Source: Octopus sinensis | Taxonomy: Eukaryota | DNA: 64,000 nt | Direction of reading: 5' to 3' | Assembly (NCBI RefSeq): GCF_006345805.1 | Contig: NC_043005.1 | Location: 28,210,001-28,274,000, forward strand | Shown: in pieces, positions 30,696-61,494 of the stretch | Position numbering within the stretch: the stretch's first letter is position 1 | Layout: each line of letters begins with the position of its first letter | The notes under the pieces: model-generated | What the model was told of the DNA's origin: nothing | Databases searched by the model: none | The model's input: only the letters and a program-made list of their open reading frames with translations | Program-made: the position numbers and the translations under genes

Positions 30696-30785
<90 letters not shown>

Positions 30786-30836
30786 CCAAAAAGCTATTTC
30801 TAAAATCTCCCTAAGAGGGGAACACAATAGTTGTAC

Positions 30837-31005: not shown

Positions 31006-31129
31006 TATATATATAAACTTTGTTAAGGTTAACTTAACAAGGACAGAAACAGACATGACCCTACCCACTTCATGTAGGTGGACTTGTTTGATTTGTAGGT
31101 AATGTGTAAGCAGGAACTCCATACTGTAT

Positions 31130-31430: not shown

Positions 31431-31944
31431 AACAACAAGGTGTCAATAGAGTTAGGAGATAATTGTTCTTGGCTTGGTGTGATTGTGGCAGCAGTCAAAA
31501 TGTTGTTAGTGCTGGCTGTACTACTGTCTTCTAATGTCTCTTTGGGTCAGCTGTTGTCCACTGTCCCTTTACCATCTGTCTGCTGCCGTTTCCTCCTAGT
31601 AGTTGAGGTACACTGAATATATGGTAATGGTTAGGTTCAGAAAGAAACACACCAAAAGAGGAAATTGTTGCTGGAGCCGGTTCCAGGCAAAGTCTTGCTT
31701 AGTCAAATCTTTTCAATGACATGGATAATATTCTAGTGAATCATGACATCAGATATAGTGATCCGATTGCTAAATATTCTTGCTACACCTATATGCATGC
31801 ATACATATGTATGTACATATGCCTGTATGTATGCATATGTACATAAATACATACATATATACATACATACATAAGTATTTTATACACATAATATATGTTA
31901 TGATTATGACTTATTTCTTTTTTTTTGTCTATTTTTCTTACTAG

Positions 31945-32872: not shown

Positions 32873-33519
32873 GTAAGTCTGTTTTTTTACTATATTATGT
32901 TTCCTTCATCAGCTGACATAGCTGATATCCCTCCTCCTCTCTCTCCCACTCCTCTTCTTATCTCCCCACTACTTCCTTTCTCTTACTTGTAAGCTTTTTC
33001 ATATATTCATAGTGAAAAATAAAGTGCAAATTTGACTGTAGTTACAGGAAAGCAAACGTTACCTCAAAGGATATGGTGCAAGAAATCCAAAGACGAATGC
33101 AGACAAATTTCAGCATTATTATGATCTCATCAGCAAAGCATAGATTTCACCATACTTGTTCGTGTAATAATGAGAGAATCATTGAATAAATATGCAAGAT
33201 TGTACATTTCTTAGCTTGGAGAATAGAAATGCTTAAAAGTTAATTATTCAAGATATACATAACATATGTTACATGACTTCTTATTATTTTACATATACAA
33301 TATGTAGACAGGAAGTATTCTAAGTTATGTTATAAATATTACATAAATGACAAGTAGCCCAGAAATACATTGAAATGTCTCTTCTCTCTTCATAACACCC
33401 ACCATTCTGTCGTAAAATTATTCAGAAGAATTTCCAGAATGCCATCTGACAGCTTTCTACTTTGGTAACATTATTCCACTCAAGTACTGAAGCCGTACAA
33501 TATCTAGTGAATATTTGGG

Positions 33520-34797: not shown

Positions 34798-37379
34798 TAG
34801 CTTCTTAGTTTATGATATATATTAGAGCTTATTGCTGATTTATAACATACAATATACAATTGGTATTAGAGTATGACAAATATTAAGGCCTATTGTTGTA
34901 TTAGAGCCTGTTATTAGAACTAAATATGTTATTATTAGAACTATCATCATCATCATTATTACTATCAAACATTGGTTTTTTTTCCATGTTGTCATGAAAA
35001 TTTTGTCTGCCACTAATTGTGATCTTTCATCATCTTTTCTATGAAACCCAACATCTAGAGTTTTCATATTTTCTTTGGTCTTCTACTACCACAAATACTC
35101 TTCACTGTCAGCACATTACATCATTTTATCACCCAGCACGCATTGTCCAATCACATCACATGCCCACACCATACTCAACCAATGTAGCCATCTCTCAGAC
35201 ATACACTGCTTGGTACCTTTAAAAGCCAACCACTCTCTCACCTCACCTCCACATTCATATAAGTCCACGTTATACATGCAACGTCTTATTTACATCATTT
35301 CTCTCCAGTCTCCTCAGGTTCTTATACATTCAGTCAAACAATTTTCTACCAAGATATGATAATTGATTTGATATCATCATCATCATCAGTTAAGGTCCAT
35401 ATTCCATGCTGGTATGGGTAGGATGATTTGACAGGATCTGACGGATCCAAAGACTGTATGATAGTCTAATATCTGCTTTGGCCATTCCTAAACACCAAAC
35501 ACTTTACAGTATGTACTGAGTGCTTTGTTTCAGTTGCACCAACGCTTGTGAGATCACTATGAAGCTGTATGGTCAAGAAGTTTATACAAGTACAGCACAA
35601 CTGTGTGACTAACATGTTTGTTTCCCAACCATGAGGCTTCAGGTTCAATCCCACTGCATAGCACCTTGGTGCCCTTTACTATATAAATCAAAGCCTTGTG
35701 AGTGAATTTGGTAGATGGAACTGGAAGAGGAAGCCTATTGTGTGTGTGTATGATTCATTGTTTTGACTTCACTTTGGTTGTTGTAAATGAGCATCACTGT
35801 CATACGAGCAGTGTCATTCATTTCCAATATTCCATGGAAACGTTTGACTATTGGGGGGAAATATTACCTTGCTTAGAGGCAGATGAAGGTTGGTGACAGT
35901 AAGGGTATTTGGCCATAGAATATCTGCCTCAATAAACTGTATCTGACCCAAGCAAGCATGGAAAAGTGGACATTAAATTGATGACAACGACAGTGATGAT
36001 AAATGACCTATGCCATACCATATAAAGCTGGAAATATTAATCTTAAAACCATCTATGAAGCTGAATATGTAGCTTTCAAACTGAAAATCTTTACAGATTA
36101 GTCTATTTCTAGAAAAACCTGATTCAGTATAAAGAAAACTAAAATAGTTTTCCACAGAAACCAGAATAATCTAATACTTTGTACAACACCAGAACTGAAC
36201 AAGAAAAATAATAATTCCATCGGAAAATATAAAATAACTTTAAAATGCCCATATTCGGAATAGCAGCATCTAGATTATTGAATAGCAGGAATTTCTGATT
36301 TGCTGCACATGTATGGTCTTTTAATGAGAATATCTTTAAAATCGATTGTTAATTACTGCTTTCTCTTATAAAAAGGGTTGCAGTAATGGGGGGGGGGTGC
36401 GAGCTGGCAGATACATTAGCATGCCGGGCGAAATGCTTAGTGATATTTCATCTGCCGTTCAAATTCTGCCAAGGTCGGAATTCATCTCTTTCGGGGTCAA
36501 TAAATTAAGTACCAGTTACACACTGGGGTTGATGTAGTCGACTTAATCCGTTTGTCTGTCCTTGTTTGTCCCCTCTATGTTTAGCCTCTTGTGGGTAGTA
36601 AAGAAATGAGTAAAGGGGGGTGGGTGATAGTGGTGGTGGCAGCATTGTTGTTGTTGTAGTTGTTTAGCCCTAGGTCATCTGTGATAGAGCACACTCGTTT
36701 ATGGTGAAAGACATACTACACAGTCTTTTTTATATCCAGAACTACACTGTCCACTGTATCTTTGTTTTTAAGGCAGTCTTGTGTACTTTGAGGACAATTC
36801 AGTTGCTATTTCTAACAGATCCAGTGACCACATAGAGGTTCCCTTGTTAGTTTACTCTTTTATTCTTTTACTTGTTTCAGTCATTTGATTGCGGCCATGC
36901 TGGAGCACCGCCTTTAGTCGAGCAAATCGACCCCAGAACTTATTCTTTGTAAGCCTAGTACTTATTCTATCAGCCTCTTTTTGCCAAACTGCTAAGTTAT
37001 GGAGACGTAAACACACCACCATCGGTTGTCAAGCAACATATACACACACATACACATATATATATACATATATACGACGGGCTTCTTTCAGTTTCCATCT
37101 ACCACATCCACTGACAAGGCTTTAACCAGCTCGAGGCTATAGTAGAAAACACTTGCCCAAGGTGCCACACAATGGGAATGAACCTGGAACCATGTGGTTG
37201 GTAAGCAAGCTACTTACCACACAGCCACTCCTGCGCCTATGTTTATTATTTACTGACTTCGTTCCTAGATTTAATCTCTATAGTAAGAGACCCATAAAGA
37301 CATGATACATTATATGTCACTTTGTTTCCAGCCATTACACCCCAGTTTTTTATCAACCATTAATATCCAATAACCTACT

Positions 37380-38130: not shown

Positions 38131-38309
38131 CATGAAACAACTATAAATTATAAAACTCGAAGTTCAAAAAGTCGAAAATGTAAAAAAATAAAATATCTGC
38201 AAAGAAAGAAAGGAAGAAGAATTGGGTTTGAAATGCTTATTTTAAAAGAACAAAACAATTCTTATTGATAATTTATATTCAACTTTGAAATATCTTTTTT
38301 TCCTTTCAG

Positions 38310-38352
38310 AATCTAATGATACATCACAGGGGCAAGAGCGTTGTTCTCTAAT
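38310..38352 (+). CDS. FYB: FYB-like exon (43 nt, phase 1->2): (K)SNDTSQGQERCSL
   Basis: Acceptor ttttttcctttcag, donor gtaagt; keeps the frame between flanking exons. Confidence 0.75.
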
Positions 38353-38968
38353 GTAAGTCAACAATCTTTTAAGTTTAATTCCTTCAGTTTCTAGTTAACC
38401 ATTAATGGAATGTATTTTCAATGTATTGATTATTTGATAAAACTAGTTCTTTATTCAACTTGCTTCTATAGTCTTTTCTTATTTTTGATTTTTCAAAGTG
38501 AAATCTTTGCCAAAATTCAAACTCCATTTGTTTTGTACAATAAATGATAACTCTCCTATATCTGCATTTTCTTTCAACTCTACATTTCAGTTGCTATGTT
38601 CTTCGATTTTCTTCAGATCGTCATCATTGTCGTCATCATCATTATTTATTTATTTATTAATTTACATATGTACATTTTATCTGACATTCAAATGAACCCT
38701 TCAACATATTGCCTGACAAAGACTTTCATTGTTGTTATTCACCTAGCATATCAGTGTTCTTATGGGCAAGAACACAATTTTTCCAGACTGTCTATCTCAT
38801 CTTTAGAGTGTGTATTTACACTATTTATATATATTTACAACTTATATATATACCGGAGTAAATACATAAATGTGAAACAAGATGGAAAAAAGAGTACTCA
38901 AATACCAGGGGTAGAGTAATATGCTTTATTTAAAAGGTTTTGTTGAATTTCTGCTGCTTTTAAATAAA

Positions 38969-44975: not shown

Positions 44976-45681
44976 TTGCAACAGAGGTGTTAGTGGTGGC
45001 AGCAACTGTTGTTGTTGTTGCTGTTGCTGCTGTTATTTTGGTTCTCTATTTAAAATATTAGATATTTCATCTTCATGCAACAAGCTAACATACCCAGTTT
45101 TTATTTGTCTCATATATCAAACCATCGTTGTGCATTCTCTTACAAACCCAGACAATATTATATCATATTCAGCCTTGCCGTGAACATTTTCTCAGTCTTT
45201 TATGTGAGATAAAGAATACCTGTCATTTAAGCTCATACATCCCTCTAGCCATCCAACACCCCTGAACATGGATCATTCTTGCTGTATCAATTGTTAGAAA
45301 TAATAGCGCCATGCAGTATATCGTTAGCCAGCTGCTTAATTAATATGATTATGGACTATGTTGAATGCAACTACCATCTCTGCAATTATTTCTTCCACAA
45401 ACTAAATCCTGCTGATAAAGAACATATGTGATGATCATGACTGGAACTCCCCACCTCCTTGATTATAATTCTTCTCTGTCAGCATTGACTAGTTGCTAAA
45501 CAACATCAACACACACACACACACACACACTTCCACTCATTCATCTTCATTCTCTCTCTCACACACGCAAATATACACATTCACACATCTGCCATATCTT
45601 ATGACTTTACTGCATGATAAATCAGTTATAAGTAATTAAATAGTAAATTAATTAATCTGTTCATTAATTAATTTATTCCAG

Positions 45682-45731
45682 TTGCTAGTTCTACCAGTTC
45701 TGACCAGACATATGATGATATTGGGAATACG
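45682..45731 (+). CDS. FYB: FYB-like exon (50 nt, phase 1->0): (V)ASSTSSDQTYDDIGNT
   Basis: Acceptor atttattccag, donor gtaagt; encodes YDDI, similar to ADAP YDDV SH2-docking motifs. Confidence 0.8.
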
Positions 45732-47019: not shown

Positions 47020-47751
47020 TCTCACACACAGATGTGAGGTAGTGCATGGCAGCAAAATATGGCTAGAAATACAGAGGATTATAACATGTGGTGTTTTGTA
47101 AGATGTGTGATGGTGTACAGTAGTGAAGCACTGACAGTAAATGTAGAAGACTATGTCATGTGATTGTGGTGAAACATGAACAATGAATATAGAAGGCTAC
47201 ATGTGATGTGATAAGATGTGTGGTGGTGTTTGACAGTGAATTTAGAGGATTGTATGTGTTGAATGTAAGATATTTGATGGCGTATTGTACTGGAACCTGT
47301 AGAGAAAACTCAATGGTGGATTTTGAGGGTTTCCAGTTATTGAGGAAAGAAATTATATGATCCACTGGATGTGAAATGTTGATTTAAATCTGAACTGAGA
47401 CAGTGTTTGTGTCTCAGGTGATTGGAAGATATCAACTGGGTGAAGCTATCTTTGGAGCTTCACATTGGATGTTAATCAGCTGTAAAGATGGAAAATGAAG
47501 TGTTTAATAGTTTGTTGTCAGTTGAGAATATTGGAGCTCAAGGATACAGCTATAAAATGAAAATGAAAGAGTGTATATTTACAGATCTGTCCAACCCATA
47601 GCAATGGAGAAAATTGACTCGCAACATTACAAAATGACAATGTCCATAATGATACCTGTGTGTGTGTGTTCTTACACATATGTATATACATTTGTATGCA
47701 TGAACCTCTTCAACACTTTCCTCTAACTCTACCCATTCTTTTCCATTTCAG

Positions 47752-47795
47752 CCAAGAGTTGATGAAAGTGACGATGCATATGATGACTTAACTGA
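47752..47795 (+). CDS. FYB: FYB-like exon (44 nt, phase 0->2): PRVDESDDAYDDLT
   Basis: Acceptor cattcttttccatttcag, donor gtaagt; acidic YDDL motif. Confidence 0.8.
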
Positions 47796-48374
47796 GTAAG
47801 TAATCTTTTACCACCATTATTGTCACCTGTGATACAGTTTTACCCCATCCCCCACCCCACCCCACTTACTCATTTCAGGTCACATAATTAATGTTCTGCT
47901 GATCTGCAATGCATGCACATTATATAAAGCATTAAATACTGGTCATGTCTTTGGTGGTAGTTTTTGTATTTGTGTATGTCGAACTCTTTTGTTGTTTTGA
48001 CAAATGAAAGTTTAGCAAGGCACAGCTGCCCAGTGGTCTTAATCACTGGACTTATGAAAATGTGTGATGGCATTAGTGTCTTGGTTTGCTGAATAACCGA
48101 CACAATGAATATTATTAAAATGGACGTAATTGTGCAGAGCCATTCCCATTCTCTTCTCCTTGAAACTTGTATTGGTTTGGTGCAACTAGTGAACATGAGC
48201 CAAGTATTTTATCAGGATGCAGGAATTGCATGGAGTTACCTTCTCTTTGTTGCAGCAGCTAAAGAGCTGAAGGGCCTCATCTGCCCTGACTCTGTTGGAG
48301 TGTCTGTAAATGACATTCTTCCAGAGGTTCTTTTGTGTATGTGTAGGTGTATATATATATGTGTGTGTGTGTGC

Positions 48375-48806
48375 AGTTGAAATTTACAGGAAGACAAAAG
48401 ACAAAGATAGGTGTATAAACAACAACCAGGTGTATTAGTTCGATGTTCAGAAAGGTGAGAAAGTCTTTTACATTTTGAGCCTACACTCTTCAACAGAAAG
48501 GAAAGCAAGAAAATAAGCAGAGTAAGAAAAAATAGAAAATTCAAAAAATTCGAAAAAGTTCAAACATTGTGGTGTATTGGAGCGATTTTTCATGAACAGA
48601 AAATTCCAGTGAAATCCATAAGTATATCCAGTAGTAATATATATATTAAAACTTTTTTGATTCTCTCACTGTTTATTTTCTCATGTTCCTTTCTGTTGAA
48701 GAGCATAGGCTCGAAACGTAAAGGACTTTCTCACCTTCTCGAGCATTAAACTAATACACTTGTTTGTTGTTTACACACCTGTCTTCATCTTTTGTAAATT
48801 CCAGCT
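48375..48806. mobile_element. Inverted pair of a second Penelope-like terminal repeat family (a further copy at about 10270-10437)
   Basis: About 48375-48530 is the reverse complement of about 48655-48806; mirror peptides FLLKS(V/I)GSK in the ORF track. The PLE assignment is inferred from the inverted arrangement and the hammerhead-like motif. Confidence 0.5.
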
Positions 48807-49143
48807 ATATATATATATATACATAGACAGACTCACCTATGTATGTCTGAGTAACTAGATGTGTGTATGTGCATGTTTTTTTTACATCTGAGTTCCTCCT
48901 AAAGTCTCTGAGCTGCAAGTTATAATGATGTTGTTATTTTCCCTGTCAACAAATTATCCACTGTCTTTGCACTTTTGAAGATGTGTGAAATAAGAGATCT
49001 CCCACCTGCAAACAAGGGTTAATGACAGGAAGTTTGCATCTGGCTGTAAAACAATGCTTCAGTGTTATAGTCATCTACTCAATGCCAGCATGGAAAAATG
49101 GATGCAAAAACAAATGAATAAACTACACTTTAACTCTCAACAT

Positions 49144-49911
49144 TATTTTATTTTATATCATTTGCCATAAAGGCAGTACACAGATATGTATGTAGCTTTG
49201 CAGGCTGGACAAGACATTAATGAGGCGAATGATAATTATATAAGATGATAAAGATGGGAGAAGACAGAAAGCGCCCGCCGACCCTCTGCTTCTCTAAAAC
49301 ATTATTTGTTAAAAAACAACATATATATATGTTGGTATTTAAACCTCTTACAAATATATACAAAAAAATTGGACTAGAAGTTCATCACAAAGGAAACAAA
49401 ATTTATACATATGGAGGCAATAAACCTCTTATATTACTCCCTCAATTAACTCGTTTGCGGCCTGCAGGTATTCCTGCAACCACCAATTGGAGCCCAAAAA
49501 AAGTAATCTGTATTCTTCCCTTGGGAAGGATCTTGATCTGTGGAAAAAATCTTTTCTTTACAGTACCAGTGCAGCCACCTGCGAAGGCCACTCTGGACTG
49601 TCAATAAAAATCGGGTCCATCAGAACCCGACTATCAAGATTATTTGCCACATACTCCTCAATCGCCCCTCCCCTGCGATAGAGGAATACAAATTCCTCGC
49701 CACTTTCATTGAGAGGAACCTCAACTACCTCGCTCAGTGGCACACATCCCACCGACAAGGTTTCCTTCTTCTCCTCCTCCGGTGGCACACATCCCACCGA
49801 AGGGATTTCGGGACATGCCATCACCTGCAATGCCCCGTTTTTCTTTTTCTTCTTCTTTCTTTTCCCCTTTGCGACGGGAGGGTGGAGTTCCTCCGACATG
49901 TCCAGAGGTCC
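49144..49911 (-). mobile_element. Retroposed insert (retrocopy or non-autonomous retroelement) with an intact 113-aa ORF at 49558-49899
   Basis: Exact 16-bp direct repeat ctttaactctcaacat at 49128-49143 and 49912-49927; A-rich 3' end (…tataaaataaaata) on the minus strand; more GC/CpG-rich than the flanks. Confidence 0.8.
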
Positions 49912-50304
49912 CTTTAACTCTCAACATACTTATATGCAGCAAGGTAGACAGTACTATTGACAGTTTAGTGTGTTGGTCATGGACACAGCACAACAAACTA
50001 AACCACACTTTGATGCCTATTTGCATGCAGCTAATTAAACTGGACTGTTAATAGTTGTGTCTTAGTCATGGACACAGTAGAGTAAACTCTACCACACTTT
50101 GGAACCTGCTGACTGCTAAGTGGACTTTTGGAATCATATAATACCTGGTACAACTGAAGTATGACATCTGACATGCTTTTGTTCCTCTAAGCCATTCCCT
50201 ACATTATACTGCCTTTAAGAAAAATATGGTCACATGACTAATTTTGTTAATTTCTGCTTGACCTTTCCTCATTTTTAACCTTTCCTGTTTGACCTCTTCT
50301 CTAG

Positions 50305-50392
50305 CTTCCAGGAAAATGAAAAGAAACGAGAGAAGGAACAGAAGGAACGGCGAGATAAAGAAGAGAAGAAAAGGAAAGAAAAAGAAGAGAAG
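50305..50392 (+). CDS. FYB: FYB-like exon (88 nt, phase 2->0): (D)FQENEKKREKEQKERRDKEEKKRKEKEEK
   Basis: Acceptor gacctcttctctag, donor gttagt; Lys/Glu-rich helix like the one preceding the first hSH3 of ADAP. Confidence 0.85.
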
Positions 50393-50761
50393 GTTAGTGT
50401 GTACATGTGTGTGTTTATTTTACATAGTTGGAAACTAAACAGTCAGTGATCCATGGTTGTATCTATCACTGGCTGAGTTGTGATGTTCATGGACCTCTCA
50501 TGGGTATTAATACAAGTTAGTTGTCATTGTTAAATGGAATTGGTTTGTAGGTTCAGTTACTCAAGAGATGATGATTTCTCATAACCTTGGAATTTTCACT
50601 GATTGGAATAAATCTTAATAAGTAACAACCAGAGGGTTATAGATAGATAGATAGGAAGGTAGGCAGGCAACAGGCAGGCAGGCAGGCAAACAGACAGACA
50701 GGAAGGTAGGCAGGCAGGCAGGCAGATAGACAGATAGAGAGATAGACAGATAGAGAGATAG

Positions 50762-50823
<62 letters not shown>

Positions 50824-53312
50824 GGAGATAGAGAGAGAGATAGATCAATAGATAAAGAGAGAATTGGTTGTGGTGGAGGAGGAGGAGAATAATGTTAGCT
50901 GGTACCCTCAGTTCAGCTCTTATCAAGCAGACCTATCATCAGAGGTATTCCAATCATGACCTTCCTGTCATTCAGTGTAATTTAGAACATTATCCAGTAT
51001 GTTCTTACTTCTTTTTTTGAGAAGATACCATGCAATTTGTGAGAGATTTAACTGCTATTTCTAATAGTTTCAGTGGCTACATCGAGTCTCCTTCATTTTG
51101 GCTTGGTGTTTAATTAGTAACTACAGCTGCAGACTGAGAGAGATGGGATCAGCTCATAAGGAATAGGATTCAGAGGATTTTTACTTGTAGTAACTACTAT
51201 TACTACTGCTACTGCTGCTGCTACTACTTTATACAATGTTACCAGCAGCTGTAAATTACACATGATTGATAAAAGTTGATAGAAAAAAAGAAAATTGCAG
51301 TGAGTTGATTTGCTGAGAAGAGAGAAAACATTCATTTTCGACTTTTATTCTTCTTTGCAGAAAGAGAGAGAGAGATTATAGAAAGCAATAGCAGGAGTTG
51401 GTCTGAGAAAGGTGAAGGAGAGGAAAATATGGATTTGTAGGTGTGGGGAGTGAAGGGGAAAAGGACAGTATGCATAGGGTGGGAGGAAGTAAAGTGAGAA
51501 GCTTCCTATCATTTTAGTTCTGTTAAAATTTCTAGGAGAGCCAGGTTAGAGAGAGATAGACAGACAGACAGACAGAGAGTTGAGGGCAGAGTGAAGAAAA
51601 ATGTACAATAAGATATGAACATTTAAAGTCAGAGAAGTAGGAAGATATAAAAGTGGTTTGTTGAAAATATATAATGAACTCTGAAGAGGGTAAAGAATTG
51701 TAAGAATGAAAAAAATGGTATTTTCGGAAGGGAGACAGGCAAATGTAATGGTCTGAGATAAAATGTAGGGAGGATCAATTATGGCTGACCTGAGGCTAAA
51801 CAACAACATATATTAGGTGATGTGCAGTCAAGATTGGTGAGTGATGTTGATCCATAAAGTGTGTGGTGGGGCCTAGTGGAACAGTTGCATAAGAGATGAA
51901 GGGAGAAGCAAGGTCACATAGTTGGCAACATTTGGAAATGTTAGGTTGAGCATGTCTGGGAGAGAGTAAGAGAAGCACTGGTTATGAGGTCAGAGTTTTA
52001 ATCATCTTTGCAGGATAGAGGTAGAAAGTCAGGAAAGGCAAGAGTGAAAACAAGATTTGGTTGATTGAGAGCAGAAGGAGGATATTCTAAATCATCGAGT
52101 AGCAGGATGAGGTTAGAATTTGGTAGTTTCACTAGTTAGAGGCTGACTTTGCCTTACATCCTTTCGGGGTTGATAAAATAAGTGCCATTGGGGTCCTCCC
52201 CTAAAATTGCTGCCAAAATTTGAAGGCAATTTTTATTAACTCCCACCCCACCCTCTCAGTTCAAATGGGATTTTTAGTCATGTGAGCTCATGGTGGCATC
52301 ACAAGTGTAGATGCCATGAAAAATACACTCCTCAATGTAGTTGCTGATTACTTCACTTGAACATCATCCCACAAAACATAAGGGTTCCAATACATCTAAG
52401 AAACAACTGGACATTCTTTATGTATCTTTTTGCAAAAAGACATAAAGGGAATCAAAGTTCTTCATTCACTGCTAATCAACCACAAAACAAAGAATGCCTC
52501 CACAATGATGGGGACGCTGCAATATGGTTTATGGTGAAAGATCAATGTATTTATACATTTTATATATATATTTATGAATATGTATTTATATTCTTTTATC
52601 TATATAAATAAGTACTGGGGTCGATACATTTGACTAAAAATGCTTCAGTTGTGATACCTGTGCCTGTGACACATTGGGCTTCACAGTGGAAATGATAAAA
52701 GACCAAGACCTCTGAGATATGCTGTGACTGCGAAGACCCGACAAATGAAGTGAGTTCATGGCTCACAGGACGGCCTGCTGTGGTAACTTTGGATCGTAGA
52801 GTGAACCGTTGTGCTTGAGGAGACCTTATTGAGTCAAGTATCTCAACATCAAAATAAATATCAAATGGAAATTATAGTTATGATACCCCTGCCAGTGGCA
52901 CATAAAAAGCACCATCTGAACGTGGCGGATGCCAGCGCTTCCTGACTGGCATCCGTGTCGGTTACACGTAAAAAGCACCAACCGATTGTGGCTATTTGCC
53001 AGCCTCCTCTGGCCCCTGTGCTGGTGGCACGTAAAAAGCACCCACTACACTCACGGAGTGGTTGGCATTAGGCAGGGCATCCAGCTGTAGAAACAGTTAG
53101 ATCAGACTGGAGCCTGGCATAGCCTCCTGGCTTCCCAGACCCTGGTTGAACTGTCCAACCCATGCTAGCATGGAAAACGGACGTTAAACGATGATGATGA
53201 TGATGTGGTGACTCAGAATGACTGAAACAAGTGAAAGATAAAAGATGTATTTGAGGAAATTAGAAATTATTTGTGTAACTTTATCACTTATATTGTATTT
53301 TTTTTTTCAAAG

Positions 53313-53363
53313 GAGAGGAGAAAGCAAGAGAAAGAAGAAAAGAAAATGCGGGCCAAACTTAAA
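53313..53363 (+). CDS. FYB: FYB-like exon (51 nt, phase 0->0): ERRKQEKEEKKMRAKLK
   Basis: Acceptor ttttttttttcaaag, donor gtaggt; corresponds to ADAP 'EKEKKEQEIKKKFKL'. Confidence 0.85.
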
Positions 53364-53693
53364 GTAGGTAACCCTTTATTCACTGCCTTTTACTATTTTC
53401 CTGTTTCTTTGAACCCTAATCTGAAACGTCAACCCTTTACACCTGTAACTCTGTCTATTGAACCAATGTCTTCAACTCTTTTCCAACAGAGAGTATTATT
53501 CACATTTACTGCACGCCCACCTCACCTACCACAACATAGCCTGACTCTTGAACTCTCTACTCTCCATCAACTCCTTGTAATTTGTCTTCAGTCTTGAACT
53601 CCCTACCAACATACCACACACAGCTTCACTTATATTACAAGACATGGAGAAGGGCTAGAATTTGACTTTATGGAAAAATAACATCCTTGTATT

Positions 53694-54137
53694 TACAGTT
53701 CTATATTTAAGAGATGAGGAATTATTTACATTTGATGGATATTTGTCCTCATCTTGTTTGTTGTTAACACAACGTTTTGGCTGATATACCCTCCAGTCTT
53801 CATCAGGTGCCTTGGGGAAATTTCAAACCTGGGTTCTCATTCCTAAGGTATTTTTTGATGTTATTATTATTCAGGTTACTGCCTGGAATTGAACTTGGAA
53901 TCTTGGATATAGAAACCTGTGCTTTTTACCACTACACATAGTGGTTAATTATTATTATTCAGTGACATGAATAATAAAATAATAATAATAATAACATCAA
54001 AAAATACCTTAGGAATGAGAACCCAAGTTCAAAATTTCCCCAAGACACCTGATGAAACCTGGAGGGTATATCAACCGAAACGTTGTGTTAACAACAAACA
54101 AGATGAGGACAAATATCCGTCAAATGTAAATAATGTA
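53694..54137. mobile_element. Same family, head-to-head palindromic dimer
   Basis: About 160-bp inverted arms around a reverse-complement tRNA-like head. Confidence 0.75.
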
Positions 54138-55712
54138 TTCTTGTATTTGTTCATCTCTTTTACATCCATTTTCCCATGTTAGCATGGATTAGACAAATCT
54201 AATATTGAAGCATTGTTTTACAGATGGAGTCTCTTCTGGTTGCTAACCCTCTCTTGTTCTTCAAATAAGGAATTTCCTATTTCATATGTCTTTGAAGGTG
54301 TGAGAATAACCTTACTGTTTGAGCTTTGGTATTTTTGTAGACCACAAATGTAAACAAACACACAAATTCATATATATACAGTAACTAGCAGCTAAGCCCG
54401 GTTTCACCCGGTCGGTTTGGATGATGAGGCTGTAAAACCTTCTCTGTGTAAGCATTCGATTTGTTTGGGCATGCTTACGTTAAAAAACAATTTTAGAATG
54501 ACTTTTCTCTGTCAAAACGCTAAAAATTACTGACCAACAAAAAAAAAACCAACCAAGATTCAACCAAATCAAAAAATAAACCCATATACTAAGTGAACAA
54601 AGATGAACCACCCCACTTCCATTGTGTGTGCACACACACACACACATTCACATACTCCCCTTTTACATACACACACACATATATTCACAGAGTTGAAACG
54701 GTGTTTGATTTATTTTTTCAGCGTACAATTTTCATCATCCCACTACCAAGTATGACATCACCCCCTTCCTTCCTTATTCATCTATCACCCCTTCCTTTCT
54801 CATTCATAAACACAAGAGTATTATCATAGAAGATTATCTCGGTAACCATGGGAGCTATGAAAACAATACAAAGCCCAGCATCACCACCGTATCATCGTCT
54901 GTGTAATTTTTTGCACAAATGTAAACAAACACAAATTCATATATGTTCAGTAATATACTGGTGTTTATATCATCCATATAATCCAATCTCACTAAATACT
55001 ATCCTTCAGTATGTTTTTTTCCTACCAGATACCAGTAATAAACTGGTATCAATATAATCCACTATCACCTCTTTCCACCATATCTCTTTACTCTCTTTAA
55101 TCTTTTACTTGTTTCAGTCATTTGACTGTGGCCATGCTGGAACACCACCTTTTTAGTCGAGCAAATCGACTCCAGGACTTATTCTTTGTAAGCCTAGTAC
55201 TTATTCTATCGGTCTCTTTTGCCGAACTGCTAAGTTACGGGGATGTAAACACACCAGCATCGGTTGTCAGGCGATGTTGGGGGGACAAACACAGCCACAC
55301 AAACATATACACATACACAGACATATATATATATATATATATACGATGGGCTTCTTTCAGTTTCCATCTACCAAATCTACTCACAAGGCTTTGGTCAGCC
55401 CGAGGCTATAGTAGAAGACACTTGCCCTAGGTGCCACGCAGTGGGACTGAACCCGGAACCATATGGTTCGTAAGCAAGCTACTTACCACACAGCCACTCC
55501 TACGCCTGTGGCCTTGTGCCAGTATTAAAGAAGACAAAGATGTTATTTCTAAAATTAAGTAAGGTTTATCCTCCAACACCTTAACCTCTCACCCGATGTG
55601 CCACACATTGTAGTAAACTGCATGATCTGGTCTTCAAATTATTACGGTAGTATTTTCTTTATAGACAATTTGTTAATGCTGTAATCATATTTATCATTTG
55701 ATTGGTCCACAG

Positions 55713-55875
55713 ATGGATGGTACTGAACAGGTACTCAGCGAAGGAACTTACACAGGTGAAGTTTTTAAACCGGGCAAGCTGGATCTCGCCATTAAGAAAG
55801 GAGACAGAATAAATATCCTTCGAATGCATAACAATCCTGCAGGGAAGTGGCTGGCCAAATCTGAGGATGGTCGAC
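55713..55875 (+). CDS. FYB: FYB-like hSH3 exon (163 nt, phase 0->1): MDGTEQVLSEGTYTGEVFKPGKLDLAIKKGDRINILRMHNNPAGKWLAKSEDGR
   Basis: Acceptor ggtccacag, donor gtaagt. 'DLAIKKGDRINILRMHNNPAGKWLAK' matches the ADAP hSH3 pattern 'ELSFKQGEQIEIIRITDNPEGKWLGR'. Confidence 0.92.
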
Positions 55876-56147
55876 GTAAGTGGGAATGCCTTTATGTTCT
55901 TGGTTTATTGAATTTATTTTAGTCTTTTATGTTTTTATAGATTTTAAAGTGTGTGTGTATGTATATGTATGCAATTATGTAGGTAGGTTAAAATCCAAGC
56001 TGTGTATTCTTGAAGCATGTCTGCTTATTCCAGTATTACAATCCAGTGTGCAGTTGTATGTGAGGTACATGTTAGAGTTGAAAATACTGGAAATACTGTT
56101 TGCAGAGTTATTATATATCAAAACTGAAAGTTAGAAAAAAATTTTGA

Positions 56148-56272
56148 TATTATTTATACACCATTACACATATTTCATTTGCTAATAGGAGTTACAAAAT
56201 TGTACATGCTGGATGTACAACTTTGTAATTCCTATTAGCAAATGAAACATGTGTAATGATGTATAAATAATA
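56148..56272. repeat. Near-perfect hairpin, 60-bp arms, 5-nt loop
   Basis: 56148-56207 versus the reverse complement of 56213-56272: 4 differences. Confidence 0.9.
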
Positions 56273-56298
56273 CTAAAATATTCTTCCAGTTTCTTGTA

Positions 56299-56786
56299 CA
56301 GGGTGTCCTGTAATTAATTATTTCAGTGAATTCAGACAATTTTTTTTTAAAAACTCACTTTTATTTATGTTTATCATGTTTAATATGTGTTAAAAGTGTA
56401 TATATTTTTAATTTTGTTTATAATTTTTTTTTATAATTTTATTTTCATTCCTGCTGAATCTTGCTTATCTGTCCATGACAGTTTTTTTTCAATTTGGCAG
56501 AAATAGTTTAGCTAAACTTAAAAGAACACATTCAGTTAGCAGTGCAGGAGATAATTCCTGAAATGCTTCAAAATGTGTTTTGCAATGCTAAAGATAGATT
56601 TGAAATTTGCAGGGATACAATCAGAGTACATATTGAAAATTTTCAATAAAATTTTGACGTAAGATTTCTAAATCTATTTGTTTTTGGTATCATATTAAGT
56701 ATTAAACATAAAATTCTGTCAGTTTTTCTTAGAATTTACCTGATTTCATTGAAATAAATAGATAAATAGTTAATTCTGGGACACTG
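56299..56786 (+). mobile_element. Tc1/mariner-type MITE
   Basis: TA|cagggtgtcctgtaattaa ... ttaattctgggacactg termini; internal 'IPEMLQNVFCNAKDRFEIC...HIENF*' resembles a transposase C-terminus. Confidence 0.6.
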
Positions 56787-57703
56787 TGTGTGCGTATATA
56801 TATATATACTTTTAACATCTGTCTTCCATGCTGGCATGGCTTAAACAGATTGAGAGAGTCCAACAGATTGCTGAAATGCATCATCATCATCATCGTTTAA
56901 CATCCGCTTTCCATGCTAGCATGGATTGGACGATTTGACTGAGGACTGGCGAACCAGATGGCTGCACCAGGCTCCAATCTGATCTGGCAGAGTTTCTACA
57001 GCTGAATGTCCTTCCTAACACCAACCACTCCAAGAGTGTAGTGAGGGCTTCTATGTGCCACCGGCACAAGGGCTAGTCAAATGGTACTGGCAATGGCCAC
57101 GCTCAAATGGTGTTTTTTACGTGCCACCTGCACAGGAGCCAGTAAGGCGGCACTGGCAACGACCTTGCTCGAATGTTTTTCACATGTCACCAACACAAGT
57201 GCCAGTAAAGCGACGCTGGTAACAATCACACTCGAATGGTGCTTTTTACGTGCCACCAGCACAGAAGCCAGTTTGCTGCTCTGGCAACAATCATGCTCGG
57301 ATGGTGCTCTTAGCGCAACACTAGCACGGATTTCAGTTATCAAATTTGATTTTGATTACACCTGCCTCAATAGGTCTTCGCAAGCAGTTCCAATATATGT
57401 TCTTCCTCTTCCTTATGCCAATTACTTTATAGAAAATGGTACCAGTATGTAATACTGTTGATATGTAACAATATCAATGTATTGCTACTACCAATATGTA
57501 ACAATAGCAATATGTAATAACAATATGTAACTTACACTACTGTGTCATTATAATAATAATTTTACTACAATGATAGCAATATTAGGTATTACCAATATGC
57601 AGTATTATCTATAAATGTAATGACACCAATATGTTACATTATGAATAGGAGATGTTATCAATATGTAATGAAACCAATGACTCAGTGAACACTACAATGT
57701 TTA

Positions 57704-58198
57704 TACAGTTCTATATTTAAAAGATGAGGAATTATGTACATTATTTACATTATTTACATTTGATGGATATTTATCCTCATCTTGTTTGTTGCTAACACAA
57801 TGTTTCGGCTGATATACCCTCCTGCCTTCATCATGTGTCTTGGGGAAATTTCAAACCTGGGTTCTCATTCCTACGGTATTTTTCCAATGTTGTTGCTGTT
57901 GCTGCTGCTGTTGTTGTTGTTCAAGTCACTGCCTGGAATCAAACTCAAAATCTTGAGGTTAGTAGCCCATGCTCTTAACCATTATGCCTTATGCCCATGG
58001 GCATATGGCATAGTGGTTAATTATTATTATTCAGTGACCTGAATAACAACAACAACAACATTGAAAAATACTTTAGGAATGAGAACCCAGGTTCGAAATT
58101 TCCCGAAGACACTTGATGAAGGCTGGAGGGTGTATCAGCCGAAACGTTGTGTTAACAACAAACAAGATGAGGATAAATATCCGTCAAATGTAAATAAT
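57704..58198. mobile_element. Same family, head-to-head palindromic dimer
   Basis: Inverted arms centred on the perfect palindrome tatgcccatgggcata (57990-58005). Confidence 0.75.
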
Positions 58199-58232
58199 TT
58201 ACTAAAATGTTTGTTTCAATATCTTCTTTCAG

Positions 58233-58285
58233 TTGGATACGTTGACTCACAGTTTGTCGAAATTTGTGCATCCAATATCAAAAAT
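58233..58285 (+). CDS. FYB: FYB-like exon (53 nt, phase 1->0): (L)GYVDSQFVEICASNIKN, end of hSH3
   Basis: Acceptor atcttctttcag, donor gtaagt; completes the SH3 fold (ADAP 'YGYIKTTAVEIDYDSLK'). Confidence 0.88.
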
Positions 58286-59352
58286 GTAAGTACGACATGA
58301 TGTGTAGTGTGTGTGTGTGTATGTGTGTGTACTCGCAGGCATGGCTGTATGGTTAAGAACTTGCTCCCTGACTATATGGTAGTGAGTTCAGTCCCACTGT
58401 AGGGTGCCTTGGGCAAGTGTCTTCTACTATAGCCTCAGGTTAGCCAAAGCCTTGTGAGTGAATTTCCAAGAGAGAAATTGAAAGAATCCTGTTGTATATA
58501 AGCTGGTTACTTGGTTTCCACAGTGTATAAAATCTATGTGGTTGCAACATGAAGCTTGAATGTGTGTGTCTGTGTTTGTCCTCCCACCATCGCTTGACAT
58601 CCGATGTTGGTATGTTTATGTCCCCGTAATATAGCAGCTCAGCAAAAGAGACTGATGGAATAAGTACTAGGCTTACAAAGAACTAGTTCTGCGGTCAATA
58701 TGTTCAACTAAAGGCGGTGCTCCAGCATGGCCACACTCAACTGACTGAAACAAATAAATGAATATTGTGTGTACTTATTAATACAACACATTTCTATTAA
58801 GAAGGCATTGATATAATGATGGGTCAGGGACCCCCTTCAGTCATGAATGACCATGGAATTGCGCCTACAAAGTTACCCTCTGAGGCACAAGTCTGGGCAA
58901 GGTTGTTTATGGAAGACCAGCAGTCACCCATGCATACCAGCCTCCCCTCTCCACACCACCGATGCTATCCAAGGGAAAGGCAATGGGGCCAATACAGCTT
59001 GGCACCAGTGACATTGCCACTCATTTCTACAGCTGAGTGAACTGAAGCAATGTAAAATAAAGTGTCTTTCTCAAGAACACAACATGTAGCCTGGTCCAAG
59101 AATCGAACTCACAACCTCACGATCATAAGCTCGATGCTCTAACCACTGAGCCATGCACATTGAGTATTAAGTAGGCATTGATATAATGATGAGTAACCAT
59201 TGAGTATTAAGTAGGCATTGGTAATTGATAACAGCACTGCAGAATATATTTTTTGATATAGTAAGACAGTCATATTATATATCTCTTGAGATAATAGCCC
59301 TTGTATGTGATATCAAATTTTAAATCTATCCTCTCTCTCTCACTGTCCACAG

Positions 59353-59390
59353 GTCATGGGAATTGGTCACTCACAGACGCAGTCTTCAGA
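59353..59390 (+). CDS. FYB: FYB-like exon (38 nt, phase 0->2): VMGIGHSQTQSS; gene continues
   Basis: Acceptor ctctctctcactgtccacag, donor gtaagg; in frame with the previous exon. Supported only by splice signals and frame. Confidence 0.6.
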
Positions 59391-59729
59391 GTAAGGCATC
59401 TTTCACTAACTTTATTTTCTCTTATGTAACTTCTGCTACTGTTATTATTGCCTTTACAATGACGAGGTTTTTTTTTTGTTTCTTTTCTTACTTAATTTAA
59501 AATATATTAAATGTCATTAAATTATATTATAGCAATCATCATCATGTGTCATCATACTCTTCACTTCACCATCATCTTTGTCTTTTGTATTTATTGTTTT
59601 ATTATTATTATTATTGCTGGGGATTTATAATAATAATAATAATAATAATAATCAAAGAGATCTTTATCATTTCTTTCCACCAAATACAACTTCCAGTTTT
59701 CTCCATGTTGTTATGAAAAAAACTGGATG

Positions 59730-59787
<58 letters not shown>

Positions 59788-60871
59788 GCATGTGTGTGTG
59801 TGTATACACTGTTGGTCTGGTTTGGAGGAAGGAGCCATGTCCATAAACCTTCATAGAGCTTCAAGACTTGTGTGGCTGTTACCGTTAATGTTCTTTTCTG
59901 CCTGCATTGATATAAGTCTGCAGCTTCAGAAAGATATGCAGTGAGGTGGATATTCCAGAAGACAAATATTAGAGAGAGGAAAGACTGAGCATAATGGCTC
60001 AAATGGAGCCTGGAGGGGGTTGGACTACAATACAGGCCATGAGAGGTGGGCGAGTAAAGAGTATTTGGGTGGAAGTGACACAAGACCTGAAAGCTCTAAT
60101 GCACAGAAACTATTATAGTTGTAGTAAAAAGAAGAAAAAAGGAAAGGGTAAAGCTTGTCTGAAGGTCAGAGGTTAAAAAGTGTTAGTAAATGATTTCATC
60201 TTAATCAGTGAAGTGGCTTTTGGGAGATGCTGTCAAGATATCTGTATGTGTAGCAGAAGCACTGGCAAAGATTTGGCACTAACATTGCATTGTGTGTCTT
60301 ACTTGAATCCTGCCAATGTTTTTTTTTTTTGTTTGTTTTTTTGGTGGGGGGTGCAGTATTTCTGGCTCTGAAGAAAAAAGCCAGTCTTTTAGATTCTCTC
60401 TTGACTCTAATGCATGTGTCTGTTCATTGATTTGTCAGTTAGTTTAACAATCTCAACATGCTACAAAACCATTCAATCCTGACCATAACAAAATTCCAAA
60501 CACATTAGCTAAAGTAACTCAACCATGAAATGCCATTCACAGTATCAGAAATTCCTTGATAAACAAATATGCCCTCAGTCAGTTTTGCAGTTAATTTCCC
60601 TTTCAAACCAACAAGTCATTAAATTTCCCTAACCTTGAGCAAAATAAAATTCCTGCCTGACAACAATATTCTTAAGTACCACACAAAAGACATGCAAAAT
60701 CAAAGTTGACAAAATAAAAAACATAAATAAAACTTGACCATGTAAAAGCATTTTTAATTAAATTAAAAGACAACTACAGAACAAAAATAAGAATAAATAT
60801 TCCTTCTCATCAACAAGTACAAAGAAAATAAACTCCATGCCAAAGGCATAACTAATTGTATGTCTATACTT

Positions 60872-61340
60872 GTGATGAAGCAAGTGTTGTTATGCATGTG
60901 GTGAAGCAAATGTTGTTTATACATGTGATGGAGCAAATGTTATACATGTGGTGAGGCAAGTGTTGTTATACATGTGGTGAGACAAGTGTTGTTATGCATG
61001 TGGTGAAGCAAGTGTTGTTATACATGTGGTGAGGCAAGTGTTATACATGTGGTGAGGCAAGTATTGTTATACATGTAGTGAAGCAAATGTTATGCATGTG
61101 GTGAAGCAAATGTTGTTATGCATGTGGTGAGGCAAATTTTGTTATACATGTGTGGTGAGGCAAGTGTTGTTATACATGTGGTGAAGCAAATGTTGTTATG
61201 CATGTGGTGAGGCAAGTGTTGTTGTACATGTGGTGAAGCAAGTGTTGTTATGCATGTGGTGAGGTCAGTGTTGTTATGCATGTGCAGAGGCAAGTGTTGT
61301 TATATATGTGGTGAAGTAAGTGTTGTACATGTGGTGAAGC
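60872..61340. repeat. Minisatellite, about 19 units of 23-28 bp (consensus gtggtgaagcaagtgttgttatacat)
   Basis: Directly visible head-to-tail units with no unique spacers. Confidence 0.9.
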
Positions 61341-61494
61341 ATGTGCTGTTAGCCTTGACATTGCAGATGGTTTTGTGGTATGCTGGTCTTCTCCAAAAGC
61401 TTATATCATTTGGAATTTCTGGAAGGTTCCTTTGGATTATTTTCTCAATAGATTTGGCATTACATTTATTTTAAACAGCTTTTCGTCTACTTAT

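What the first reader, a model, noticed from the sequence alone, without database searches (positions are those of the whole stretch)
49128..49927. Antisense retroposed 768-bp insert with a perfect 16-bp TSD and an intact orphan ORF
Seen: the exact TSD ctttaactctcaacat on both sides. On the minus strand the insert starts about 12 nt before an ATG and encodes MSEELHPPVAKGKRKKKKKKNGALQVMACPEIPSVGCVPPEEEKKETLSVGCVPLSEVVEVPLNESGEEFVFLYRRGGAIEEYVANNLDSRVLMDPIFIDSPEWPSQVAALVL*. This includes an NLS-like basic run and a duplicated SVGCVP motif (gtggcacacatcccaccga twice). About 410 nt of UTR-like sequence follows and ends in ataaaataaaata. CpGs are retained, unlike in the flanks. Known: long TSDs plus an A-rich tail are the signature of LINE-mediated TPRT. 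Inference: a young retrocopy of an unknown short mRNA (cellular, viral/Polinton-like, or an internally deleted LINE). I do not recognise the protein.
Basis: partly seen in the sequence, partly recalled or inferred. Interest (0 to 1): 0.72.

Follow-up and report, generated by a model that had tools for sequence, protein, structure and literature searches.

The report
Young retroposed insert in octopus intron
A 768-bp piece of reverse-transcribed RNA landed in an intron of an octopus SH3-domain gene after the split from Octopus bimaculoides and duplicated 16 bp of target; this is an ordinary kind of event, and its 113-codon reading frame matches no known protein.

Summary
The exact 16-mer occurs only at 49128-49143 and 49912-49927. 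It brackets a 768-bp insert with a minus-strand 113-aa ATG ORF, 414 nt of trailing sequence and an ATAAAATAAAATA end. The window is octopod DNA. The orthologous O. bimaculoides locus (L003) has one copy of the 16-mer (2 substitutions) and no insert, so this is a lineage-specific insertion with a true target-site duplication. It lies antisense in an intron of an SH3-domain gene, 378 bp upstream of an exon. The mechanism is most likely target-primed reverse transcription by a non-L1 LINE: there is no poly(A) run, the nick site is not TTTT|AA, and other retroposons in the window have 16-31-bp TSDs and A-rich mixed tails. The source RNA is unresolved. I favour a retroposon-family transcript over a one-off mRNA retrocopy. 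The ORF is an orphan: no Pfam or PDB match, and one repeat-inflated hit in 1.84 billion proteins. It has coding-like periodicity but non-host codon usage, and an ORF this long appears in 3% of shuffles. This is an ordinary event with a mildly curious passenger ORF. Copy number could not be tested.

The parts
49128..49143 (.). Left copy of the 16-bp target-site duplication, CTTTAACTCTCAACAT.
   Evidence: It is one of only two exact matches in the window. It corresponds to the single CTTTAACTCTTAACCT in O. bimaculoides L003.
49144..49911 (-). The 768-bp inserted sequence; its sense strand is taken to be the minus strand.
   Evidence: It is absent from the orthologous O. bimaculoides site, and the joined window flanks align there without a gap. 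CpG o/e is 0.62. There is no second copy in the window or in L003.
49144..49156 (-). 3' end of the insert, ATAAAATAAAATA. This is about 2.6 units of ATAAA and contains the only AATAAA hexamer; there is no poly(A) run.
49144..49557 (-). 414-nt trailing (3'-UTR-like) part, 35% G+C, containing T>=4 runs.
   Evidence: The fold z-score is only -2.0.
49558..49899 (-). 113-aa ATG ORF including the stop codon. It has a basic K-run, two 15-aa units carrying SVGCVP, and a C-terminal region of about 45 aa with weakly predicted beta-alpha-beta-beta structure.
   Evidence: pLDDT 42. No family or relative was found. Position-specific composition is G1 0.41, G2 0.17, G3 0.42.
49900..49911 (-). 12-nt leader before the ATG. 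It is in frame and free of stops, so the ORF could be the tail of a longer, 5'-truncated frame.
   Evidence: the frame is open over 49561-49920.
49737..49800 (-). Internal duplication: the identical 19-mer at 49737-49755 and 49782-49800, with a period of 45 nt (15 codons).
49912..49927 (.). Right copy of the 16-bp target-site duplication.
47752..47793 (+). Upstream flanking exon of the host SH3-domain gene (aa 194-207 of the O. bimaculoides protein).
   Evidence: tblastn, 100% identity.
50305..50392 (+). Downstream flanking exon of the host gene. It is the K/E-rich alternative exon FQENEKKREKEQ..., and lies 378 bp from the insert.
   Evidence: it matches P0003 aa 209-237.
49015..49118 (.). End of an older SINE-like repeat just left of the target site. 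It is shared with O. bimaculoides.
   Evidence: Paralogous copies lie at 54142-54223 and 5014-5100. The same sequence is present in L003.

Best explanation
After this octopus lineage split from O. bimaculoides, an RNA of about 0.77 kb was copied into the genome by target-primed reverse transcription.

Proposed steps:
1. A LINE endonuclease nicked the window's plus strand after ...CAACAT.
2. The freed 3'-OH primed cDNA synthesis on the A-rich ...AUAAAAUAAAAUA end of the RNA.
3. The second strand was cut 16 bp away, and fill-in produced the 16-bp duplication.

The enzyme was not L1-like. It was probably the same non-LTR machinery that moves this genome's SINEs, which also leaves long TSDs and uses A-rich mixed tails rather than poly(A). 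I think the template was most likely a transcript of a low- or moderate-copy retroposon family: either the 3' end of a 5'-truncated LINE or a LINE-dependent non-autonomous element. I think a polyadenylated cellular mRNA is less likely. At this locus the copy is an intronic, antisense passenger with no demonstrated function, and the 113-aa ORF is probably not expressed as a gene here.

Shown: the insertion, the TSD, the lineage specificity, the orientation and the intronic position. Inferred: RNA intermediate, the enzyme class and the nature of the template.
For: Insertion and TSD:
- The exact 16-mer occurs only twice, at the two edges of the insert.
- O. bimaculoides L003 has one copy of the 16-mer, no insert, and gap-free colinearity with the joined flanks.
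- Flank divergence is K2P 0.075.

Not a DNA transposon or LTR:
- There are no terminal inverted repeats and no TG..CA ends, and a 16-bp TSD does not fit those classes.

Not L1-type and not a canonical mRNA retrocopy:
- There is no A-run at the 3' end.
- The only AATAAA ends 3 nt from the insert end.
- The nick site is CAACAT|ACTTAT.

Same style as local retroposons:
- The lineage-specific SINE at 36400-36608 has an ~18-bp TSD and the tail GTAGTAAAGAAAT.
- The composite SINE family has the tail GTAAAAGAATAAAAGA.
- The SINE-like element at 58822-59172 has a 19-27-bp TSD, and the 538-bp insert at 54376-54913 has a ~31-bp TSD.
- The octopus LINE with evidence of recent activity is RTE-class; no such evidence was found for the Dong element (PMC9115989).

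Pointers to a TE-type template:
- The frame is open to the 5' end of the insert, as in 5'-truncated LINE copies.
- Codon usage is unlike the host gene's: GAG 10:5, AAG 7:3 and four TCG codons, against GAA 16:4 and AAA 21:11 in host exons.
- No relative exists among annotated proteins, including O. bimaculoides.

Not a Pol III SINE:
- The sense strand has seven T>=4 runs.
Against: - No second copy and no LINE sharing the 3' end was found in the 64-kb window or the 45.7-kb O. bimaculoides locus. This only excludes families above roughly 7x10^4 copies.
- No RT or endonuclease remnant is present, and no Pfam hit was found in any frame's ORF.
- The layout looks like a small mRNA: an ATG 12 nt from the 5' end, a CDS-like GC-rich half, an AT-rich 414-nt trailer and an AATAAA near the end.
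- CpG o/e of 0.62 equals that of a host exon (0.66).
- The insert's tail resembles the SINE tails in style only, not in sequence.
- The protein collection does not hold this species' own ORFs. A second TE-like ORF from the window also found nothing. Negative protein searches therefore say little either way.
Confidence: 0.5

Rival explanations
1. This is a one-off retrocopy (processed pseudogene) of a short host Pol II transcript, either an unannotated lineage-restricted mRNA or a lncRNA. It would have been made in trans by a LINE reverse transcriptase, with priming on the A-rich end of the 3' UTR instead of a long poly(A).
For: - The layout is CDS plus 3' UTR, with the ATG 12 nt from the 5' end and an AATAAA at the 3' end.
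- The ORF shows coding-like base periodicity: G1 0.41, G2 0.17.
- CpG o/e matches that of a host exon.
- It is single-copy in about 110 kb of octopus sequence.
- The 45-nt internal duplication keeps the frame.
Against: - There is no poly(A) remnant although the TSD is perfect. Three A-to-T changes in 13 nt would be needed, against none in the 32 TSD bases.
- The hexamer sits only 3 nt from the end.
- Codon usage is unlike the host exons in the window.
- No parent or paralogue exists among O. bimaculoides proteins or among 1.84 billion representatives.
- RTE-type LINEs, the class with evidence of recent activity in octopus (PMC9115989), are generally template-specific and make few gene retrocopies. 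This last point rests on established knowledge and was not tested here.
Confidence: 0.3
2. This is a retroposed copy of a foreign mRNA, for example viral: a non-retroviral endogenous viral element captured by LINE machinery.
For: - The ORF is an orphan with an NLS-like basic run.
- It uses G-ending codons and four TCG codons, unlike host exons.
- CpG is not depleted.
Against: - No relative was found in IMG/VR contigs, JGI metagenomes, prokaryotic genomes, PHROGs, Pfam, PDB or 1.84 billion protein representatives.
- The only hit is to a 15-aa tandem repeat of a eukaryotic contig protein and is statistically inflated.
- Non-host codon usage is equally expected for transposable elements.
Confidence: 0.05
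3. This is a DNA-level event: either a non-canonical transposon, or capture of a DNA or cDNA fragment during repair of a staggered double-strand break.
For: - There is no poly(A).
- It is single-copy in the sequence available.
- No partner LINE was identified.
Against: - No DNA-transposon superfamily makes a 16-bp TSD, and there are no TIRs.
- Break-repair filler rarely gives a clean 16-bp duplication with no deletion. The junctions here are exact relative to O. bimaculoides.
- Neighbouring bona fide SINE insertions show the same long TSDs.
Confidence: 0.05
4. The insert is ancestral and was precisely deleted in O. bimaculoides by recombination between the two 16-bp repeats.
For: With only two species compared, the polarity is formally not fixed.
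Against: - Precise excision between 16-bp repeats is very rare.
- The insert keeps CpG at 0.62 while the flanks are at about 0.2.
- The two repeat copies are identical although the flanks differ by 7.5% between the species.
Confidence: 0.02

Closest known systems
L1-type processed pseudogenes / gene retrocopies (mammalian model)
   Same: - It is flanked by a long (16-bp) target-site duplication.
- The ORF-plus-trailer layout looks intronless.
- It has an A-rich 3' end.
- It sits in an intron in antisense orientation, as many tolerated retrocopies do.
   Different: - There is no poly(A) tail.
- AATAAA sits 3 nt from the end.
- The nick site is not TTTT|AA.
- No parent gene is identifiable.
- The host's LINE with evidence of recent activity is RTE-class, not L1 (PMC9115989).
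LINE-dependent non-autonomous retroposons with short-repeat tails. These are SINEs of 'stringent' LINEs such as the L2/RTE partners; the octopus SINEs in this window are local examples.
   Same: - Long, variable TSDs (16-31 bp in this window).
- An A-rich mixed tail instead of poly(A).
- Recent activity in this lineage.
   Different: - At 768 bp, it is longer than the SINE insertions in this window (about 205-420 bp).
- It has no tRNA-like head and has seven internal Pol III terminators.
- It carries a 113-aa ORF.
- The tail sequence is not the same as the SINE tails.
- A multicopy family has not been demonstrated.
5'-truncated LINE copies and ORF-bearing deleted derivatives (for example HAL1, 'half-L1')
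   Same: - The reading frame is open to the very 5' end.
- It is followed by a roughly 0.4-kb untranslated trailer and a short-repeat tail.
- Composition and codon usage differ from host genes.
   Different: - There is no RT, endonuclease or known ORF1-type domain.
- No related LINE was found in the available sequence.
- Any resemblance to the octopus RTE-2 elements could not be tested, because their sequences were not retrievable.
Non-retroviral endogenous viral elements made by LINE machinery (for example bornavirus-like EBLN)
   Same: A short mRNA-sized insert with a TSD and an orphan-looking ORF that carries a basic stretch.
   Different: There is no similarity to any viral protein or contig in any collection searched, and no poly(A).

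Membership tests
TPRT (non-LTR) retroposed insertion, generic | Target-site duplication of variable length, typically 5-30 bp, generated at insertion. | tested here: met
   There is a 16/16 exact repeat at both edges, and a single copy at the empty orthologous site.
TPRT (non-LTR) retroposed insertion, generic | Presence/absence difference with an exact empty site in a relative. | tested here: met
   O. bimaculoides L003 positions 29491-29506 hold the empty site, and the joined window flanks align there without a gap.
TPRT (non-LTR) retroposed insertion, generic | A defined 3' end with an A-rich or short-repeat tail next to the TSD, and no terminal repeats. | tested here: met
   ATAAAATAAAATA abuts the TSD, and there are no TIRs or LTR ends.
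L1-type processed pseudogene | Poly(A) tail following a polyadenylation signal at a distance of 10-30 nt. | tested here: not met
   No run of five or more A lies at the 3' end, and AATAAA occupies positions 760-765 of 768.
L1-type processed pseudogene | L1 endonuclease target, TTTT|AA on the primed strand. | tested here: not met
   The primed strand reads CAACAT|ACTTAT.
L1-type processed pseudogene | An identifiable intron-containing parent gene. | not testable with these tools
   No eukaryotic genome-wide DNA search was available. No protein relative was found.
SINE / LINE-dependent non-autonomous retroposon family | Many dispersed copies, each with its own TSD. | not testable with these tools
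   No further copies lie in the 64-kb window plus the 45.7-kb L003. This only bounds copy number to below roughly 7x10^4.
SINE / LINE-dependent non-autonomous retroposon family | A 3' end shared with a partner LINE. | tested here: inconclusive
   No sequence in the window or in L003 shares the 3' end. The partner LINE may simply be absent from this sample.
SINE / LINE-dependent non-autonomous retroposon family | An internal Pol III promoter or small-RNA-derived head. | tested here: not met
   There is no tRNA or Rfam match, and the sense strand has seven T>=4 runs.
LINE (truncated or internally deleted copy) | A remnant of reverse transcriptase, endonuclease or a known ORF1 domain. | tested here: not met
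   Pfam found nothing above its thresholds in the ORFs of either strand.
DNA transposon / MITE / Polinton | Terminal inverted repeats and a superfamily-specific short TSD (2-10 bp; 6 bp for Polintons). | tested here: not met
   The ends TATTTTATT... and ...AGAGGTCC are not inverted repeats, and the TSD is 16 bp.
Solo LTR | TG...CA ends and a 4-6-bp TSD. | tested here: not met
Endogenous viral element | Significant similarity of the ORF to a viral protein or genome. | tested here: not met
   Searches found nothing. A fold search was not run because the model has pLDDT 42.

The most novel reading that the evidence does not exclude
The 113-aa ORF is a genuine protein-coding sequence of foreign origin, for example an mRNA of an unsampled cephalopod virus. 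Octopus LINE machinery copied it into the germ line, which would make the insert a young endogenous viral element with no known exogenous relative. A milder version is the founding member of an ORF-carrying, LINE-dependent retroposon family peculiar to this octopus lineage.
Probability: 0.06. Interest if true: 0.6.

Novelty: new member of a known kind. Interest (0 to 1): 0.27.

Why it matters
The insert is a clean, datable example of recent retroposition in an octopus genome: the filled site lies in this window and the empty site in O. bimaculoides. Together with neighbouring insertions, it shows that the machinery active in this lineage leaves long (16-31-bp) duplications and does not need poly(A). 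That is useful for annotating cephalopod repeats and for calling insertion polymorphisms.

The insertion also places a 33-nt pyrimidine tract on the sense strand of the host SH3-domain gene, just upstream of an alternative exon, so it could affect splicing. The orphan ORF would matter only if it proves to be conserved among copies or expressed. Nothing here shows that.

Tried and rejected
Searches with the ORF or insert that found nothing:
- Pfam and PHROGs on the ORF and on the other long ORFs of the insert.
- PDB sequence search.
- Word-indexed protein search.
- Exact look-up of the ORF in the collection of public assemblies.
- IMG/VR, JGI metagenome and prokaryote-genome scans with the protein, plus one exact DNA 29-mer.
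- Six k-mers against the stored part of the O. vulgaris transcriptome supplement of PMC9115989.

The single hit in the exhaustive HMMER search:
- One protein, P0001, came back at E = 2e-16.
- I reject it as homology. It matches only residues 30-58, against a 15-aa tandem repeat.
- A single pairing scores 32 bits, where I estimate that about 45 bits would be needed for this search space. The E-value comes from summing 12 repeat units.
- Its contig shares no repeats with the window.

Structure and RNA:
- AlphaFold on the single sequence gave pLDDT 42, too poor to justify a fold search.
- Rfam and tRNA scans of the window found nothing.
- The 3' part folds only marginally better than shuffles.

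Other leads that failed:
- A paralogous empty site was sought through the repeat in the left flank. That repeat ends before the target, so it is uninformative.
- Pfam on ten other long window ORFs found no LINE domain.
- The last protein search, with a LINE-like ORF at 31197-31613 used as a calibration, also found nothing. The protein collections are therefore not informative about octopus TE proteins.
- A possible weak intron (CTG|GTACTG ... TTGCAG|G) just after the stop codon was considered and dropped as over-interpretation.

Full report
**1. The observation.**
- The 16-mer CTTTAACTCTCAACAT occurs exactly twice in the 64-kb window, at 49128-49143 and 49912-49927. None was expected in shuffled sequence.
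- The base before each copy differs, so the repeat is exactly 16 bp.
- Between the copies lie 768 bp (49144-49911).
- 414 nt follow the stop codon and end in ATAAAATAAAATA.
- The 19-mer GTGGCACACATCCCACCGA is present twice, 45 nt apart.
- CpG observed/expected is 0.62 in the insert, 0.18-0.25 in the 5-kb flanks and 0.28 for the window.

**2. Host and context.**
- The window is rich in TA/CA/TCTA microsatellites and SINEs.
- A 306-codon ORF at 31996-32913 is 94% identical to O. bimaculoides LOC106880745, an SH3-domain protein. The source is therefore an octopod close to, but not the same as, O. bimaculoides.
- tblastn places that gene's exons on the plus strand at 32497-32871, 38303-38353, 45678-45731, 47752-47793, 53310-53366, 55710-55874, 58232-58288 and 59338-59391.
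- A K/E-rich alternative exon lies at 50305-50392.
- The insert therefore sits antisense in an intron, 1335 bp after one exon and 378 bp before the next.

**3. The empty site.**
- Looking up the O. bimaculoides protein returned the whole gene with its introns, locus L003 (GCA_001194135.2, CM046610.1:92369261-92415008).
- Window 47657-49141 aligns to L003 28037-29504, and window 49912-51427 aligns to L003 29491-31011. The two alignments overlap on the 16-mer.
- L003 reads ...AAACTACA CTTTAACTCTTAACCT ACTTCTATAC.... It has one copy of the 16-mer with two substitutions and no insert. The joined window flanks align to it without any gap.
- Flank divergence is K2P 0.075.
- The 768 bp were therefore inserted after the two lineages split, and the 16-mer is a true target-site duplication.
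- The perfect TSD does not date the event more finely. About 1.2 differences would be expected even for an insertion made right after the split.

**4. Mechanism.**
- The ends are not inverted repeats and are not TG..CA, and no DNA-transposon or LTR class makes a 16-bp duplication. Staggered nicking with reverse transcription from the target (TPRT) is the natural mechanism.
- In the insert's orientation, the primed strand is the window's plus strand: CTTTAACTCTCAACAT-3' is continued by TATTTTATTTTAT..., the complement of the RNA's 3' end. The nick site was CAACAT|ACTTAT.
- That is not the L1 site, and there is no poly(A). The only AATAAA occupies positions 760-765 of 768, and no A-run follows it.
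- Other retroposons in the window show the same habits.
  - A SINE at 36400-36608 is absent from O. bimaculoides. It has an ~18-bp imperfect TSD, the tail GTAGTAAAGAAAT and CpG o/e 0.79.
  - The composite tRNA-headed SINE family ends in GTAAAAGAATAAAAGA.
  - A SINE-like element at 58822-59172 has a 19-bp (27-bp with one mismatch) TSD.
  - A 538-bp insert at 54376-54913 has a ~31-bp TSD.
- Exact direct repeats of 16 bp or more with unrelated flanks are more frequent in the window than the roughly 0.5 I estimate by chance.
- The literature reports evidence of recent activity for an RTE-class LINE in O. bimaculoides, and transcription of a full-length RTE-class LINE in the O. vulgaris brain (PMC9115989).
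- I therefore attribute the insertion to a non-L1 LINE enzyme. This is an inference.

**5. What was copied.** Two readings remain.

(a) A retroposon-family transcript, meaning a 5'-truncated LINE end or a LINE-dependent element.
- In favour: the short pentamer-repeat tail without poly(A).
- In favour: the frame is open through the 5' end of the insert, over 49561-49920.
- In favour: codon usage differs from the host gene (GAG 10:5, AAG 7:3 and four TCG codons, against GAA 16:4 and AAA 21:11).
- In favour: transposable elements vastly outnumber gene retrocopies among TSD-flanked insertions, especially where LINEs are template-specific. This is a prior from general knowledge.
- Against: no RT, endonuclease or ORF1 domain.
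- Against: no second copy or shared 3' end in about 110 kb.
- Against: the layout looks like an mRNA.

(b) A one-off retrocopy of a host Pol II transcript.
- In favour: the layout.
- In favour: the coding-like G1/G2 periodicity.
- In favour: a CpG level equal to that of a host exon (0.66).
- Against: the missing poly(A) beside a perfect TSD.
- Against: the non-host codon usage.
- Against: the absence of any parent among annotated proteins.

I put (a) at about 0.5 and (b) at about 0.3. Pol III origin is excluded by seven T>=4 runs.

**6. The ORF.**
- It has no Pfam, PHROGs or PDB relative.
- It has no word-indexed hit and no exact record.
- It has no relative in viral, metagenomic or prokaryotic contig scans.
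- The exhaustive HMMER search of 1.84 billion representatives gave one hit, P0001.
  - P0001 is an 1840-aa protein from a eukaryotic contig in an ENA metagenome assembly, with a 15-aa tandem repeat ETxSVGSVPVSDVRS.
  - Only residues 30-58 of the query, the two SVGCVP units, match it.
  - A single pairing scores 32 bits, where I estimate about 45 bits would be needed for this search space. The E-value reflects 12 summed repeats. I treat the hit as spurious, although the shared 15-residue period is noted.
- AlphaFold gives pLDDT 42. The first ~68 residues are predicted to be disordered and the C-terminal beta-alpha-beta-beta is weak.
- An ATG ORF of this length appears in 3% of dinucleotide shuffles of the insert. 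The plus strand carries a 120-aa ATG ORF and the codon-aligned 125-aa antisense frame.
- 'Intact orphan ORF' is therefore true but weak evidence for a gene.
- One caveat applies to all these negatives. The collections do not hold this species' own ORFs, and a TE-like ORF from the same window also found nothing.

**7. Comparison with what is known, and verdict.**
- The element behaves like a LINE-mediated retroposed copy.
- It fails the defining tests for an L1-type processed pseudogene (poly(A), target site).
- It fails the tests for a Pol III SINE, for an element with recognisable LINE domains, for DNA transposons or Polintons, for solo LTRs and for endogenous viral elements.
- Membership in a multicopy family could not be tested.
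- It is a new member of a known kind: a young, lineage-specific, intronic antisense retroposition.
- The only mildly unusual feature is the passenger ORF with non-host codon usage.
- Interest is low to moderate.
- The decisive evidence is a genome-wide nucleotide search for copies and a parent locus, which these tools could not perform.

Noticed in passing
window 32497-59391 (+): The window holds most of the orthologue of O. bimaculoides LOC106880745, an SH3-domain protein. Nine exons were mapped, including an 88-nt K/E-rich alternative exon at 50305-50392. The window is colinear with O. bimaculoides L003 from 16508 to 64000.
   Followed up: partly
window 36400-36608 (+): A SINE insertion of about 205 bp is absent from O. 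bimaculoides. It has an imperfect ~18-bp TSD (AGTAATGGGGGGGGGGTG / AGTAAAGGGGGGTGGGTG), the tail GTAGTAAAGAAAT and CpG o/e 0.79. It serves as a second filled/empty pair.
   Followed up: partly
window 54345-54944: A 538-bp single-copy insert (54376-54913) has CpG o/e 0.63 and is flanked by a ~31-bp direct repeat (33 bp and 31 bp, differing by one CA indel). It lies inside a 2-kb block absent from O. bimaculoides. Its nature is unknown: it has no A-rich tail and no ORF longer than 78 aa.
   Followed up: partly
window 58803-59191: A 351-bp SINE-like element with a tRNA-like end is flanked by a 19-bp exact TSD (27 bp with one mismatch). It is shared with O. bimaculoides and is CpG-depleted (0.25).
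   Followed up: partly
window 2413-2806, 10522-10941, 36861-37241, 55087-55510, and in reverse 17234-17550, 20969-21326, 58324-58764: There are seven copies of a composite SINE of about 420 bp. It has a tRNA-like head, an internal (CA)n/(TA)n microsatellite and the 3' tail GTAAAAGAATAAAAGA. This family is a likely source of many of the window's microsatellites.
   Followed up: partly
window 21024-23158, 23513-24354, 28570-31825, 52257-53216, 53590-55639, 56008-58176: Six blocks of 0.8-3.3 kb are present in the window but not at the orthologous positions in O. bimaculoides. Several have raised CpG (0.4-0.5). They could be lineage-specific insertions, or deletions or assembly gaps in O. bimaculoides; which of these applies was not resolved.
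   Followed up: no
window 49838-49870 (+): The antisense of the ORF's lysine run places a 33-nt pyrimidine tract, followed by AG dinucleotides, on the host gene's sense strand. It lies about 435-470 nt upstream of the alternative exon and is a possible cryptic splice acceptor.
   Followed up: no
window 60865-61377: A minisatellite of about 20 units of 23-26 bp (TATRCATGTGGTGARGCAAGTGTTGT) lies in a region where the alignment to O. bimaculoides is ambiguous.
   Followed up: no
window 25936-26301 (-) and 31197-31613 (+): By eye, two ORF fragments look like the C-terminus of a mariner/Tc1 transposase and the C-terminal region of a LINE ORF2. Pfam found nothing for either, and the second had no protein hit. 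Both assignments are unverified.
   Followed up: partly
L001 3001-8523 (ENA ERZ26696912, contig ctg95957_50x_l): P0001 is an intronless 1840-aa ORF with more than 20 tandem 15-aa units (ETxSVGSVPVSDVRS), flanked by C2H2-like cysteine/histidine motifs. It lies next to a Ty3/gypsy pol gene on a eukaryotic contig in a metagenome assembly. It shares the 15-residue period and the SVG[CS]VP core with the insert's ORF, probably by chance.
   Followed up: partly
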